From the NCBI RefSeq assembly GCF_006345805.1, contig NC_043006.1, positions 58,714,001 through 58,778,000 on the forward strand: 64,000 bases of DNA, written 5' to 3'. The position numbers and the translations under genes are program-made. The notes beneath the pieces are model-generated. The model searched no databases. It saw only the letters and a program-made list of their open reading frames with translations, and was not told where the DNA came from. This document shows, one piece after another, positions 1,663 to 6,637 of this stretch; position 1 is the first letter of the stretch, and each line of letters opens with the position of its first letter. This stretch comes from Octopus sinensis. Taxonomy: Eukaryota.

Positions 1663-1795
1663 CATTATTGTTGTCAGCATTTATGTCTGCTTCATGTGAA
1701 ATCAATTTGCTTATTGATCCAAAATGACCTCCACAGATGATGAGAAGCAGAAGTGTCATACTTTCAGAGTTCTTAATTTCTAAATTCATTGAATC
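1663..1795 (-). other. Isolated ankyrin-repeat exon-like unit (copy 1 of 18)
   Basis: Translates EIKNSESMTLLLLIICGGHFGSISKLISHEADINADNNNG, followed by a GT donor (AATAATG|GTAAC). Candidate AG acceptors lie at 1780-1781 (TTTAG|AA) and 1796-1797 (CAAAG|GA). Confidence 0.65.
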
Positions 1796-1823
1796 CTTTG
1801 TGGAGGTAAAAATAGAACATATA

Positions 1824-1864
<41 letters not shown>

Positions 1865-3344
1865 AATTGAGATAGGGGTTGTAAATGCAACCCTCCATGG
1901 GATAACATATATCCAATATACTGCTAGTGAAGTACCCAACAAAGTTAATACATAAATGTTAAGAATTGCGATGCAATTAATTCATTTACTGTATTATATG
2001 GGCAAAGGTAAAATGTTTTACCACAAATTAATAATACAAAATAAGAAAATGGAGAAATACATCTAAATCAATGATCAACTACCAGATAATACCCAATCAC
2101 ATGATTTATTAAACTACTACATATGAACATTAAGGTCAAACATAATAATATAGAACAAAACAGTGTACATGGAGTAATATGATACAATAAATACAGTATG
2201 TATAAGTGAATATAAATAAATACAATATAAATATAAACTACATCTTACAGCTGTTTCGGCCATGCAGATATGGGTGTCTCATTTTGCTGATATTAGCCAT
2301 GTGTGATAGGTCAATATGTAGTTATAAATGAGACACTTAGAAAAATATCCCAAGGCCTCTTCGGAGATTATGAAATACAAACTAAATTAAATATGAATAT
2401 CAGAGGAGGTACACCCATACAAGGGTGGGTACATACCCATAATATATCATATACACATACATATGAGTGCATATACATATATATATACATATATATATCA
2501 ATATACATACATATGTTCCATATTCAATGTTACAGTTTTTCAACTTAATATTATGATATTACAATGTAGAAAACATACACATATTAATATTCAAATGCAG
2601 ATATACAAAGTCAAGAGTACATTATATTAATTTACAAAATGTCATTAATATTAACATCATTACTATTATCATTACCATTATTGCTACTAATATCATTATT
2701 ATTATTATTAATAACACTAATACTAGCAAGACAATATATGCATCACATGGTTAGCAACATAATAGCAAAAACAAGAACAACAATAATACTACAGTACCAG
2801 GCAAAACATTAAAGATCTGCATATACATATAAAATGAAAAATAAAAGTATTTGGTTTACATGATATTAAGTTCCACAAGTGTATAAATGTGCATGCGAGT
2901 GCAGTCTATAATTTTGACTGTGTCACATATACAGTATTACGTTCAGAAATAGTTAAGAATCAAACGCTAAATATGATTGGCCTGTACATTTAAATTTCAA
3001 TTTCAATTGTCTTCGTTACGGTTGGTTTGTTAAGAAACACCCACACACGCACACTTGCAAATGTGTGCCCACACACACATACACAGACAAACCACAACAC
3101 AAGAGATACCAACCCACACACACACACACACACTCACACACACACACGTTTACATACAAATCTACTCACGTATATCCATGAAAATGCATACATGCAAGCA
3201 CACAGTTATCTATACCCAGTTGATGTACATTATTATCATAAGATACATAATTAAAATAACACCGTATATTTCGTAAACAATTTATCTATCGTGCTACTGA
3301 AACTTCCAGATAGTCACAATTTCGACTGTGTTCTCATTCATATA

Positions 3345-3392
<48 letters not shown>

Positions 3393-3403
3393 GAAAAAGT
3401 TAC

Positions 3404-3902
3404 CATTATTGTTTTCAGCATTTATGTTTGCACCATACGAGATAATTTTATGTATTATTCCAAGGTGTGCCGTAGAGATGACTAGAAGGAACAGTGTCAT
3501 ATTTTGAGAGTTCTTGATTTCTAAATTCATTGAATCCTTTGTGGAGGTATATATAATTGAAAAAGTTACCATTATTGTTTTCAGCATTTATGTTTGCACC
3601 ATACGAGATAATTTTATGTATTATTCCAAGGTGTGCCGTAGAGATGACTAGAAGGAATAGTGTCATATTTTGAGAGTTCTTGATTTCTAAATTCATTGAA
3701 TCCTTTGTGGAGCTAAAAATAGAACATATATAATTGAAAAATTTACCATTATTGTTTTCAGCATTCATATTTGCACCGTGTGAAATAATTTTATGTATTA
3801 TTCCAAGGTGAGTCGTAGAGATGACTAGAAACAATAGTGTCATATTTTCAGAGTTCTTGATTTCTAAATTCATTGAATCCTTTGTGGCGGTAAAAATAGA
3901 AC

Positions 3903-3935
<33 letters not shown>

Positions 3936-4105
3936 ATTGAAAATGTTACCATTATTGTTGTCAGCATTCATGTTTGCTCCATGTGAAATGAGTTTATGTA
4001 TTATTCCAAGGTGAGTTGTAGAGATGACTAGAAGCTATAGTGTCATATTTTCAGAGTTCTTGATTTCTAAATTCATTGAATCCTTTGTGGCGGTAAAAAT
4101 AGAAC

Positions 4106-4136
<31 letters not shown>

Positions 4137-4306
4137 ATTGAAAATGTTACCATTATTGTTGTCAGCATTCATGTTTGCTCCATGTGAAATGAGTTTATGT
4201 ATTATTCCAAGGTGAGTTGTAGAGATGACTAGAAGCTATAGTGTCATATTTTCAGAGTTCTTGATTTCTAAATTCATTGAATCCTTTGTGGCGGTAAAAA
4301 TAGAAC

Positions 4307-4337
<31 letters not shown>

Positions 4338-4507
4338 ATTGAAAATGTTACCATTATTGTTGTCAGCATTCATGTTTGCTCCATGTGAAATGAGTTTATG
4401 TATTATTCCAAGGTGAGTTGTAGAGATGACTAGAAGCTATAGTGTCATATTTTCAGAGTTCTTGATTTCTAAATTCATTGAATCCTTTGTGGCGGTAAAA
4501 ATAGAAC

Positions 4508-4538
<31 letters not shown>

Positions 4539-6012
4539 ATTGAAAATGTTACCATTATTGTTGTCAGCATTCATGTTTGCTCCATGTGAAATGAGTTTAT
4601 GTATTATTCCAAGGTGAGTTGTAGAGATGACTAGAAGCTATAGTGTCATATTTTCAGAGTTCTTGATTTCTAAATTCATTGAATCTTTTGTGGAGGCAAA
4701 AATAGAACATATATAATTGAAAAAGTTACCATTATTGTTTTCAGCATTCATGTTTGCACCGTATGTGATAAATTTATGTATCATTCCAAGGTGTGCCGTA
4801 GAGATGACTAGAAGGAACAGTGTCATATTCTGACAGTTCTTGATTTCTAAATTCATTGAATCCTTTGTGGAGGCAAAAATAGAACATATATAATTGAAAA
4901 AGTTACCATTATTGTTTTCAGCATTCATATTTGCACCGTATGTGATAATTTTATGTATCATTCCAAGGTGTGCCGTAGAGATGACTAGAAGGAACAGTGT
5001 CATATTTTGAGAGTTCTTGATTTCTAAATTCATTGAATCCTTTGTGGAGGCAAAAATAGAACATATATAATTGAAAAAGTTACCATTATTGTTTTCAGCA
5101 TTCATATTTGCACCGTATGTGATAATTTTATGTATCATTCCAAGGTGTGCCGTAGAGATGACTAGAAGGAACAGTGTCATATTTTGAGAGTTCTTGATTT
5201 CTAAATTCATTGAATCCTTTGTGGAGGCAAAAATAGAACATATATAATTGAAAAAGTTACCATTATTGTTTTCAGCATTCATGTTTGCACCGTATGTGAT
5301 AATTTTATGTATTATTCCAAGGTGTGCCGTAGAGATGACTAGAAGGAACAGTGTCATATTTTGAGAGTTCTTGATTTCTAAATTCATTGAATCCTTTGTG
5401 GAGGTAAAAATAGAACACACACACACATATATATATAGTTATACATATATATAATTGAAAAAGTTACTATTATTGTTGTCAGCATTTGTCTGCTTCATGT
5501 GAAATCAATTTGCTTATTAATCCAAGATGACCTCCACAGATGCCGAGAAGTGGAAGTGTCATATCTTCAGAGTTCTTAATTTCTAAATTCATTGAATACT
5601 TTGTGGAGGTAAAAATAGAACATATTTATATATATATATGTATGTATATATAATTGAAAAAGTTACCATTATTTTTGTCTGCATTTATGTTTGCTCCATG
5701 TGAAATCAGTTTCTGTAGTATTCCAAAGTAACCACTGGAGATGACTAGAAGCAATAGTATCATATTCTCAGAGTTCTTGATTTCTAAATTCATTGAATCC
5801 TTTGTGGAGGTAAAAATAGAACATATATAATTGAAAAAGTTACCATTATTGTTTTCAGCATTCATGTTTGCACCGTATGTGATAAATTTATGTATCATTC
5901 CAAGGTGTGCCGTAGAGATGACTAGAAGGAACAGTGTCATATTCTGACAGTTCTTGATTTCTAAATTCATTGAATCCTTTGTGGAGGTAAAAATAGAACA
6001 TATTTATATATA

Positions 6013-6073
<61 letters not shown>

Positions 6074-6239
6074 GAAAAAGTTACCAATATTGTTGTCAGC
6101 ATATGTTTGCTCCATGTGAAATCAGTTTACATATTATTCTAAGGTGACCCCTAGAGATGACTAGAAGCAATAGTGTCATATTTTCATAGCTCTTAATTTC
6201 TGAATTAATTGAATCTTTTGTGGAGGTAAAAATAGAACA

Positions 6240-6285
<46 letters not shown>

Positions 6286-6459
6286 TATATAATTGAAAAA
6301 GTTACCATTATTTTTGTCTGCATTTATGTTTGCTCCATGTGAAATCAGTTTCTGTAGTATTCCAAAGTAACTCCCGGAGATGACTAGAAGCAATAGTGTC
6401 ATATTTTCAGAGTTCTTGATTTCTAAATTCATTGAATCCTTTGTGGAGGTAAAAATAGA

Positions 6460-6499
<40 letters not shown>

Positions 6500-6637
6500 G
6501 AAAAAGTTACCATTATTGTTGTCTGCATTTATGTTTGCTACATGTGAAATCAATTTTTGTATTATTCCAAGGTGACCCCTAGAGATGACTAGAAGCGTCA
6601 TAATTTCAGAGTTCTTCATTTCTAAATTCATTGAATC
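3404..6637 (-). repeat. Tandem array of 17 ankyrin-repeat exon-like units (~166-230 bp period, 177 bp in the shortest regular block, spacer length set by (TA)n)
   Basis: Unit low ends (donor side) at 3404, 3570, 3747, 3950, 4151, 4352, 4553, 4730, 4907, 5084, 5261, 5468, 5667, 5844, 6085, 6306, 6511. The peptide MTLLLLVISRGHLGIIQKLISHGANINADNNNG aligns without gaps to the ankyrin consensus xTPLHLAAxxGHLEIVKLLLxxGADVNAxDxxG. Confidence 0.85.

What the first reader, a model, noticed from the sequence alone, without database searches (positions are those of the whole stretch)
1663..6637. Array of 18 ankyrin-repeat exon cassettes: a possible diversified exon bank
Seen: 18 copies of a minus-strand unit whose peptide fits one ankyrin repeat without gaps. 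Every copy ends at a GT donor after one base of the Gly codon (phase 1). The YAG in TTTAG|AA is retained in every copy, and in copy 16 it changes to TTCAG, still a YAG. The upstream AAAG is lost in two copies. The retained acceptor defines a 117-nt phase 1-1 symmetric exon and a 60-nt intron in the shortest regular spacers. Established: symmetric exons can be chained or skipped in frame, and ankyrin repeats are modular binding scaffolds. Inference: this is either an expanding, alternatively spliced ankyrin cassette array in a gene whose other exons lie outside the window, or an exon-seeded minisatellite. Against function: all copies lack the canonical P and H of TPLH, so the founder may already have been degenerate.
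Basis: partly seen in the sequence, partly recalled or inferred. Interest (0 to 1): 0.8.

Follow-up and report, generated by a model that had tools for sequence, protein, structure and literature searches.

The report
Decaying ankyrin-exon tandem repeat in octopus
The window holds a real tandem array of a 177-base unit that looks like one ankyrin-repeat exon plus a tiny intron, but it carries stop codons, frameshifts and transposon insertions and sits in transposon-rich octopus DNA, so it is most likely a dead exon-derived repeat rather than a working exon bank.

Summary
The repeat is real. There are 18 minus-strand units in the window and 3 more just beyond its start. The sequence is Octopus sinensis chromosome CM016868.1. 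Each unit is a 117-nt ankyrin-like segment bounded by AG and GT, plus a spacer of 21 conserved nt, a variable (AT)n tract and 39 conserved nt.

Four units carry an in-frame TAG, two are frameshifted and one has a 6-nt deletion. Two of the three outside units are also broken, so 8 of 21 are disabled. Splicing all units together hits a stop in the third.

The substitutions look close to neutral:
- Minimum events are 21 synonymous and 39 non-synonymous, against an expected synonymous fraction of 0.25 (p=0.06).
- Codon positions are hit evenly.
- The number of stops seen matches the neutral expectation.
- Broken units were themselves re-amplified.

The spacers are far more uniform than the ankyrin cores. 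However, the conserved block is centred on the (AT)n tract and runs into the exon, so it does not follow the splice sites. This points to local gene conversion.

No other ankyrin exon lies in about 69 kb, and no spliced product exists in the protein collections. Penelope-like and Helitron elements interrupt or abut the array.

Verdict: an exon-seeded, mostly dead tandem repeat, of modest interest.

The parts
6511..6621 (-). u1: ankyrin-like exon-shaped segment, 111 nt, with an in-frame 6-nt deletion
6306..6422 (-). u2: 117 nt, open frame (type B)
6085..6199 (-). u3: 115 nt; a 2-nt deletion causes a frameshift and stops; preceded by TTCAG
5844..5960 (-). u4: 117 nt, open (type A; exon identical to u10)
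5667..5783 (-). u5: 117 nt, open (type B)
5468..5582 (-). u6: 115 nt; a 2-nt deletion causes a frameshift and stops; last base is A instead of G (type D)
4730..5377 (-). u7-u10: four 117-nt open units (type A, 97-100% alike) separated by 60-nt spacers. The frame also stays open through the spacers, giving the 262-aa ORF 4638-5426. Database 'protein' P0001 (214 aa) is the part of that ORF from an internal Met to its stop
3950..4669 (-). u11-u14: four units with identical exons, each with an in-frame TAG (TTG changed to TAG at codon 11), separated by spacers of 84, 84 and 84 nt (the 86-nt spacer follows u14). A disabled unit was amplified four times
3404..3863 (-). u15-u17: three open 117-nt units. 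u15 is a mosaic of types C and A. The spacer between u16 and u17 is 49 nt (an 11-nt deletion)
1663..1779 (-). u18: solitary open unit (type D, 92% identical to u6)
6651..6724 (.). Perfect 74-nt palindrome (two 37-nt arms, no loop) at the upstream edge of the array, made of (AT)n plus the first bases of the spacer
6735..6881 (-). Flank A', 149 nt upstream of the array, 86% identical to 2034-2178
2034..2178 (-). Flank A'', the second copy of the flank, upstream of solitary unit u18
1865..3340 (.). About 1.5 kb of non-repeat DNA between u17 and u18, bounded on both sides by (AT)n tracts
456..1640 (-). 5'-truncated retroelement of Penelope-like type with a C-terminal GIY-YIG domain. It starts inside the (AT)n tract of the spacer after u18

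Best explanation
This is a non-functional or no-longer-functional tandem repeat that descends from one ankyrin-repeat exon together with the ends of its two flanking introns.

Origin (inferred). A tandem duplication joined the first 21 nt of the downstream intron (GTAAC...) to the last 39 nt of the upstream intron (pyrimidine tract ... TTTAG) at an (AT)n tract. This produced a 177-nt unit that still looks like an exon plus a mini-intron.

Growth (shown by the pattern). Unequal crossing-over has since changed the copy number. The signs are blocks of identical units, interspersed unit types and a three-unit higher-order pattern.

Homogenisation (inferred). Short-tract gene conversion or recombination, probably started at the unstable, palindrome-forming (AT)n tract, keeps about 100 nt around each microsatellite nearly identical in all units. 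The 81-nt core farthest from the tract drifts apart.

Decay (shown). The coding frame is not maintained. Stops and frameshifts accumulate at the neutral rate and are copied along with the units. Transposons with a known taste for microsatellites have landed in the (AT)n tracts.
For: Disabling mutations:
- 21 units are present, and 8 are disabled by at least 4 independent events. These are 2-nt deletions in u3 and u6, a TAG in u11-14, and a +1 indel with TAG in u19-20.
- The youngest blocks (u11-14, 100% identical) are copies of a disabled unit.
- Splicing all 18 window units together gives a stop in the third unit.

Substitution pattern:
- Minimum events are 21 synonymous and 39 non-synonymous. 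The neutral expectation for the synonymous fraction is 0.25, and the binomial p is 0.058.
- Events by codon position are 23:21:30 (p=0.40).
- 1.0-1.4 stops are expected from 60 neutral events among the frame-intact units, and 1 is seen there. A second stop arose in the indel-bearing u19/u20.
- There are about 6 indel events against 74 substitutions in the exon parts.

Conserved block:
- It does not follow the splice sites. It runs from about 10 nt before the donor, through the spacer, to 27 nt inside the next exon. The differences lie at exon nt 28-108.
- Comparing type A and type D consensus sequences, the spacer has 0 differences in 60 sites and the exon has 30 in 117 (P=1e-6).
- Synonymous sites in the core vary as much as the rest, so the contrast is regional and not due to protein selection.

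Recombination:
- 154 of 946 pairs of informative columns fail the four-gamete test, and there are mosaic units such as u15.
- A perfect 74-nt palindrome sits at the array edge.

Context:
- The 149 best ankyrin proteins match only the units themselves across the window plus 5.3 kb.
- Penelope-like, Helitron and pogo remnants surround or split the array.
- The only close database protein is the genome's own read-through ORF.
Against: - The spacers are about 3 to 5 times less variable than the exon parts. A pure single-founder neutral model does not predict this. It needs the added, untested assumption of conversion focused on the (AT)n tract.
- Pairwise dN/dS values are mostly 0.2-0.6. The event-based estimate is about 0.6, with p=0.06. 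Some past purifying selection cannot be ruled out.
- All 21 units keep GT and AG, and 15 keep exactly 117 nt.
- No RNA data could be examined.
- The parent gene was not found.
Confidence: 0.62

Rival explanations
1. This is the remnant of a once-working multi-exon ankyrin domain. Several already different one-repeat exons (types A-E) were spliced constitutively. The gene then died, and parts of it were amplified and homogenised in the introns.
For: - Exon cores of different types are 70-89% identical, with synonymous distances up to 0.5-0.87, while the spacers differ by about 3.6%.
- dN/dS estimates are below 1.
- The unit types are interspersed in a B-E/D-A order that occurs twice.
Against: - No neighbouring ankyrin or other host exons lie in about 69 kb.
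- The repeats are much more alike than the repeats inside ordinary ankyrin proteins.
- The conserved block crosses the exon borders.
- dN/dS below 1 is not significant.
- The upstream array edge is a palindrome, and the downstream edge is a partial spacer that abuts a truncated Helitron. Neither is intron-like unique DNA.
Confidence: 0.15
2. This is a working cassette array. The open units are used as alternative or mutually exclusive exons of an ankyrin-repeat gene whose other exons lie outside the window. The broken units are skipped.
For: - The units have equal length and symmetric phase 1-1, and GT/AG is present in all of them.
- 13 of 21 units are open.
- The sequence upstream of every unit is near-identical, as selector sequences would be.
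- Very short spacers could prevent neighbouring units from being joined (established for mutually exclusive exons; my own knowledge).
Against: - 8 of 21 units are disabled, and disabled units were re-amplified.
- The number of open units is what neutrality predicts.
- There is no flanking ankyrin exon.
- No protein with chained units was found among 5.8 billion clusters or 1.84 billion representatives.
- The splice signals are mediocre, read directly from the sequence. The donor has C at position +5, the 20 nt before the AG are purine-rich, and a competing AAG lies 16 nt upstream.
- Helix 1 is degenerate, and a single-sequence AlphaFold model of the chain is poor (pLDDT 49) and not an ankyrin stack.
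- The conserved block has no RNA structure (z = +2.1).
Confidence: 0.12
3. This is the internal tandem repeat of a mobile element, for example cargo or a satellite carried by a Helitron-type element. It would then occur at many places in the genome and have nothing to do with a local gene.
For: - A Helitron Rep/helicase remnant lies on the same strand directly after the last unit (Helitron_like_N, E 1.9e-10).
- The unit length of about 177 nt is typical of satellites.
- Helitron-linked tandem repeats are known in molluscs (my own knowledge, not checked here).
Against: - The Helitron remnant is truncated at the junction, so no complete element encloses the array.
- The unit occurs nowhere else in the 64-kb window.
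- No other ORF of this kind was found in the protein collections that include this assembly.
Confidence: 0.06
4. This is a single unspliced coding exon with a 59-residue repeat, as the database gene call P0001 implies.
For: The 60-nt and 84-nt spacers keep the frame open, giving ORFs of 141-262 aa.
Against: - (AT)n and this spacer have no stops in that frame, so openness is close to trivial.
- Five spacer lengths (49, 86, 88, 106, 124 nt) break the frame, in addition to the stops and frameshifts in the units.
- The spacer-encoded peptide matches no family.
Confidence: 0.03

Closest known systems
Tandem exon duplication arrays used as mutually exclusive exons (for example the Dscam1 exon 4/6/9 clusters)
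   Same: Head-to-tail copies of one exon with its intron ends, equal length, symmetric phase, and a conserved sequence in front of each copy.
   Different: - In those clusters every variant is open, constitutive exons flank the cluster, and transcripts are documented.
- Here 8 of 21 units are broken, no flanking exon was found, and the conserved block is centred on a microsatellite and has no RNA structure.
Minisatellites and short satellite arrays that evolve by unequal crossing-over and gene conversion, with conserved and variable segments within the monomer
   Same: Blocks of identical neighbouring units, interspersed variants, mosaic units, a strongly homogenised segment next to a variable segment, and a near-neutral substitution pattern.
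   Different: The monomer is recognisably derived from a protein-coding exon with intron ends, which is uncommon for satellites. The array is short (21 units, about 8.5 kb including inserts).
Coding minisatellites such as the PRDM9 zinc-finger array
   Same: Tandem copies of one small protein-repeat module in which most of the unit is kept uniform by concerted evolution.
   Different: - PRDM9 is one uninterrupted exon, and its variation is almost entirely non-synonymous at the contact residues.
- Here the frame is broken, the variation is one-third synonymous, and it is spread over 20 of 27 core codons.
One-repeat-per-exon ankyrin genes (vertebrate ANK1/2/3 membrane-binding domain)
   Same: One ankyrin repeat per small exon, so that exon duplication adds a repeat in frame.
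   Different: - Those repeats are 33 residues with TPLH and are all expressed.
- These are 39 residues, lack P and H, have a very hydrophobic helix 1, and score below Pfam's threshold singly.
Donor cassette banks for somatic gene conversion or copy choice (chicken pseudo-V genes, lamprey VLR cassettes)
   Same: Many promoterless module copies with conserved ends and a variable middle. Some donors are broken without harm.
   Different: No acceptor gene, no known ankyrin-based system of this kind, and no evidence of somatic change. This is a resemblance of layout only.

Membership tests
Ankyrin repeat (Pfam PF00023, clan Ank) | The sequence matches the Ank profile above the curated threshold. 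| tested here: inconclusive
   - A chain of 7 open units scores 50.5 bits against a cut-off of 21.1, but the units are 59-92% identical to each other.
- Single units score at most about 16 bits. 6 of 9 distinct units hit Ank, with a best E of 0.007, all below the cut-off.
- Ank is the only family hit consistently.
- A profile of the unit finds only designed or natural ankyrin proteins in the PDB.
Ankyrin repeat (Pfam PF00023, clan Ank) | A 33-residue unit with the TPLH motif and the GH..V..LL..GA..NA framework. | tested here: not met
   - The framework GHLGIIxKLIxxGANxNA is present.
- The unit is 39 residues, with 6 extra in the hairpin loop.
- TPLH reads T-L/F/P-L-L in the units where that stretch is intact, and helix 1 is LLVIS.
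Ankyrin repeat (Pfam PF00023, clan Ank) | It folds as a stacked helix-turn-helix solenoid. | tested here: inconclusive
   The AlphaFold2 single-sequence model of the spliced chain has mean pLDDT 49, and helix 1 is predicted as a strand. The model is too poor to decide.
Mutually exclusive or cassette exon cluster | Variants have equal length and symmetric phase, with splice dinucleotides. | tested here: met
   15 of 21 units are 117 nt and phase 1-1. GT and AG are present in all 21.
Mutually exclusive or cassette exon cluster | All or nearly all variants have an open frame. | tested here: not met
   8 of 21 units have stops or frameshifts, and 1 has a 6-nt deletion.
Mutually exclusive or cassette exon cluster | Flanking constitutive exons of the same gene. 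| tested here: not met
   tblastn of the 149 best ankyrin proteins finds nothing outside the units in the window plus 5.3 kb. Exons farther away, or of other domain types, were not excluded.
Mutually exclusive or cassette exon cluster | Spliced transcripts. | not testable with these tools
   No RNA data were available. Indirectly, there is no protein with chained units in the collections searched.
Neutral tandem repeat (minisatellite or satellite) | Head-to-tail copies with blocks of identical neighbours and mosaic variants. | tested here: met
   (u8=u9, u11-14 identical, u4=u10, u15 mosaic; 154/946 four-gamete failures).
Neutral tandem repeat (minisatellite or satellite) | No coding constraint: dN/dS about 1, even codon positions, and stops and indels at the neutral rate. 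| tested here: inconclusive
   - Codon positions are 23:21:30 (p=0.40).
- Stops seen equal stops expected.
- The ratio of indels to substitutions is about 1:12.
- However, the synonymous share is 0.35 against 0.25 expected (p=0.058).
Neutral tandem repeat (minisatellite or satellite) | Copy number varies between individuals. | not testable with these tools
   Only one assembly was available.
Transposon-borne tandem repeat | The same unit occurs at many loci inside recognisable element ends. | not testable with these tools
   No octopus genome search was available. The unit is absent from the rest of the window, and the adjacent Helitron is truncated.

The most novel reading that the evidence does not exclude
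The open units are a working bank of ankyrin modules. They would either be chosen one or a few at a time by splicing into an ankyrin-repeat receptor, or be used as donors with conserved ends and variable middles for gene conversion into an expressed ankyrin gene elsewhere. Either way, an octopus would gain combinatorial diversity in an ankyrin binding surface.
Probability: 0.07. Interest if true: 0.8.

Novelty: new member of a known kind. Interest (0 to 1): 0.25.

Why it matters
As read here, it is a small, clear example of how an exon with its intron ends can seed a tandem repeat. It also shows how an unstable (AT)n tract can keep one part of each unit uniform while the rest drifts. That is useful mainly as a caution in three ways:
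- The array produces a long open reading frame that has already entered a protein collection as a 'protein' (P0001).
- The ankyrin score of the spliced chain is inflated by redundancy between the units.
- Retained GT/AG and symmetric phase look like function but are not evidence of it here.

Only if transcripts showed regulated use of the units would it become important, as a new way of diversifying a repeat-protein surface in a cephalopod.

Tried and rejected
- **Word-index protein searches.** I treat these as uninformative. The parent gene was therefore not found.
- **Exhaustive HMMER search.** It gave only generic long ankyrin proteins at 22-34% identity, from fungi and from mollusc STAND-ankyrin proteins. 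A parent gene sharing only one or two similar repeats would not reach the top 150.
- **DNA scan of metagenome contigs.** The conserved spacer/exon junction gave 0 matches.
- **Literature search.** A search for an octopus satellite of this kind gave nothing relevant.
- **Structured RNA, or docking/selector pairing in the conserved block.** Rejected. The minimal spacer with its exon ends folds worse than shuffled sequences (z = +2.1). Only the (AU)n expansion forms a hairpin. Rfam finds nothing in the array.
- **Diversifying selection on binding positions.** Rejected. One third of the changes are synonymous, 20 of 27 core codons vary, and the hairpin-loop residues are the conserved part.
- **Base composition as the cause of the spacer/core contrast.** GC is 0.25 in the spacer and 0.38 in the core, with one CpG. 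This is too small a difference for a 3- to 5-fold effect.
- **Six-frame ORF packs for a Pfam sweep of the minus strand.** I prepared these but scanned only the ORFs that looked like a transposase.
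Full report
**Where the window comes from.** The only database protein close to the units, P0001, is an ORF called on a 105.9-Mb record, CM016868.1 of assembly GCA_006345805.1. A paper names this assembly as the chromosome-scale Octopus sinensis genome. 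Window position w equals record position 58,714,000 + w, derived from the ranges. Fetching that locus (L001) gave 5,362 bases beyond the window start. L001 plus strand is the window minus strand, and window coordinate = 15283 - L001 coordinate.

- Fifteen exon-shaped parts are 117 nt, one is 111 nt and two are 115 nt.
- Each spacer is a constant 21 nt (GTAACTTTTTCAATTATATAT), an (AT)n tract of variable length, and a constant 39 nt (GTTCTATTTTTACCTCCACAAAGGATTCAATGAATTTAG).
- Without expansion the spacer is 60 nt (six cases). One is 49 nt, nine are 84-124 nt, and one gap is 1,624 nt.
- Three more units lie beyond the window start, at L001 15741, 15920 and 16932. The locus therefore has 21 units.

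- u11-u14 carry an in-frame TAG.
- u3 and u6 have 2-nt deletions that run into stops.
- u1 lacks 6 nt.
- The outside units u19 and u20 have a +1 indel and a TAG.
- Eight of 21 units are thus disabled, by at least four independent events.
- Two of those events were copied afterwards: u11-14 have identical exons, and u19-20 share their lesion.
- Splicing all 18 window units gives a stop in the third.
- After splicing, the junction codon is GAA (Glu). Gly appears only in the unspliced reading.

**Is it an ankyrin repeat?** Very probably it derives from one, but it is degenerate.
- Seven open units chained score 50.5 bits on Pfam Ank (cut-off 21.1), and they also pass Ank_2 and Ank_3.
- That figure adds up near-identical units. 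Single units reach at most about 16 bits (best E 0.007), and 6 of 9 distinct units hit Ank.
- A profile of the unit finds only designed and natural ankyrin proteins in the PDB. The match is GHLGIIxKLIxxGANxNAD to GHLEIVEVLLKxGADVNAD.
- An exhaustive HMMER search of 1.84 billion representatives gives 4,433 hits. The top hits I examined are long ankyrin proteins at 22-34% identity, from fungi and from mollusc STAND-ankyrin proteins.
- The unit is 39 residues, not 33. It lacks the P and H of TPLH, and helix 1 is LLVIS.
- A single-sequence AlphaFold model of the chain is poor (pLDDT 49) and not an ankyrin stack.

**Is it under coding constraint?**
- Pairwise Nei-Gojobori dN/dS is mostly 0.2-0.6, but the pairs are not independent.
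- Counting minimum events per codon among the frame-intact units gives 21 synonymous and 39 non-synonymous. The neutral synonymous share is 0.25 at the observed transition bias, and p is 0.058.
- Events by codon position are 23:21:30 (p=0.40).
- A random substitution makes a stop with probability 0.016-0.023. So 1.0-1.4 stops are expected in 60 events among the frame-intact units, and one is seen there. A second stop is in the indel-bearing u19/u20.
- The fact that 13 units are still open is therefore no evidence of selection.
- About six indel events against 74 substitutions in the exon parts is an ordinary non-coding ratio.
- There is no sign of dN/dS above 1.

**The one odd feature.** The spacers are much more uniform than the exon parts.
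- Mean pairwise distance is 0.036 in the spacers and 0.168 in the exon parts.
- There are 14 events in 60 spacer sites against 74 in 117 exon sites (P=0.001).
- Between the type A and type D consensus sequences there are 0 differences in 60 spacer sites and 30 in 117 exon sites (P=1e-6).
- This is the opposite of a normal exon/intron pair, and it is not what a single-founder neutral repeat predicts.
- The border of the uniform block is not the splice sites. It starts about 10 nt before the donor, crosses the spacer, and continues 27 nt into the next exon-shaped part. The differences lie at exon nt 28-108.
- Synonymous sites in that core vary freely. Selection on the protein therefore cannot explain the contrast.
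- The block is not a structured RNA (z = +2.1 for the minimal form).
- The block is centred, somewhat off-centre, on the (AT)n tract.
- Units are mosaics, and 154 of 946 pairs of informative columns fail the four-gamete test.
- The upstream end of the array is a perfect 74-nt palindrome built from (AT)n plus the first spacer bases.
- I therefore infer that breaks or hairpins at the (AT)n tracts start short conversion tracts. These keep the surrounding 100 nt alike, even between units separated by kilobase inserts. This is an inference, not shown.

**Surroundings.**
- The 149 best ankyrin proteins match nothing outside the units in the window or the extra 5.3 kb.
- A 5'-truncated retroelement with a C-terminal GIY-YIG domain begins inside the (AT)n tract after u18. 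It is collinear with the fuller copy at 8229-11765, at 36-52% amino-acid identity. The next units follow its end.
- Endonuclease-bearing Penelope-like elements are reported to prefer microsatellites, including (TA)n (PMC8557442).
- The 1.5-kb stretch between u17 and u18 and the 0.77-kb stretch between u20 and u21 also sit at (AT)n tracts.
- After u21 the array stops inside the 39-nt spacer part and abuts a truncated Helitron remnant (Helitron_like_N, E 1.9e-10; PIF1-like start).
- A 149-nt flank is present upstream of both the main array and u18, at 86% identity. Part of the locus is therefore a larger duplication.
- A pogo-type transposase remnant lies at 44.6-45.9 kb.

**Expression.** No RNA data could be used. 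No protein with chained units exists among 5.8 billion clusters or 1.84 billion representatives. The only close entry is the read-through ORF of this same locus.

The splice signals, read from the sequence, are mediocre. The donor ATG|GTAACT has C at +5. The 20 nt before the TTTAG are purine-rich, and the pyrimidine tract lies farther up, followed by a competing AAG. Whether octopus can splice 49-60-nt introns is unknown to me.

**Conclusion.** The best reading is an exon-seeded tandem repeat that is not maintained as coding sequence. It is shaped by unequal crossing-over and by conversion around an unstable microsatellite, and it has been invaded by transposons (confidence about 0.6). A decayed multi-exon ankyrin gene is the nearest rival (0.15). 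A working cassette array remains possible without RNA data (0.12). A transposon-borne repeat (0.06) and a single unspliced gene (0.03) are less likely.

It is a new example of a known kind and of modest interest.

Noticed in passing
L001 15741-15859, 15920-16036, 16932-17048 (beyond the window start; window coordinates about -458 to -1765): Three more units of the same repeat. Two share a +1 indel and an in-frame TAG, and one is open. The array therefore continues outside the window.
   Followed up: yes
window 456-1640 (-) and L001 13643-15662: A 5'-truncated Penelope-like retroelement (C-terminal GIY-YIG) is inserted in the (AT)n tract of a spacer. Its tail (L001 15429-15662) resembles the sequence in front of another copy at L001 19261-19487, as a pseudo-LTR would.
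   Followed up: partly
window 8229-11765 (+): A fuller copy of a related retroelement. It has an RT-like ORF at 8918-10069 and a GIY-YIG ORF at 10447-10977 (Pfam E 0.0011, below the cut-off). It is bounded by 85-nt inverted ends (8229-8313 and 11681-11765, 92%) and by TA-rich microsatellites. The ORFs are very asparagine-rich.
   Followed up: partly
L001 17200-19105 (+), just after the last unit: A Helitron remnant (end of Helitron_like_N, then a PIF1-like helicase start), broken into several frames and truncated at the junction with the array.
   Followed up: partly
window 6651-6724: A perfect 74-nt palindrome (37-nt arms, no loop) at the upstream edge of the array. It suggests a fold-back event at an (AT)n tract.
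   Followed up: partly
window 2034-2178 and 6735-6881: A 149-nt sequence occurs upstream of both the main array and solitary unit u18, at 86% identity. Its nature (part of a larger duplication, or the end of a repeat family) is undetermined.
   Followed up: no
window 4638-5282 (-): Database 'protein' P0001 (214 aa) is just the read-through ORF of four units plus their in-frame spacers, and it is the only gene called in 20.6 kb. It is most likely a spurious gene call.
   Followed up: yes
window 44598-45851 (-): A degenerate pogo/Tigger-type DNA transposase remnant (HTH_Tnp_Tc5 E 2.5e-5, DDE_1 E 1e-6), split over several frames.
   Followed up: partly
window 33646-33727 (+) and 42183-42256 (+): tRNA-Ser(GCT) and tRNA-Ile(AAT) predictions (Rfam 64.6 and 43.2 bits). 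They could be genes or tRNA-derived SINE heads. Several ORF translations in the window contain a recurring SINE-like peptide.
   Followed up: no
window 54879-54978: A run of 100 N, which is an assembly gap.
   Followed up: no
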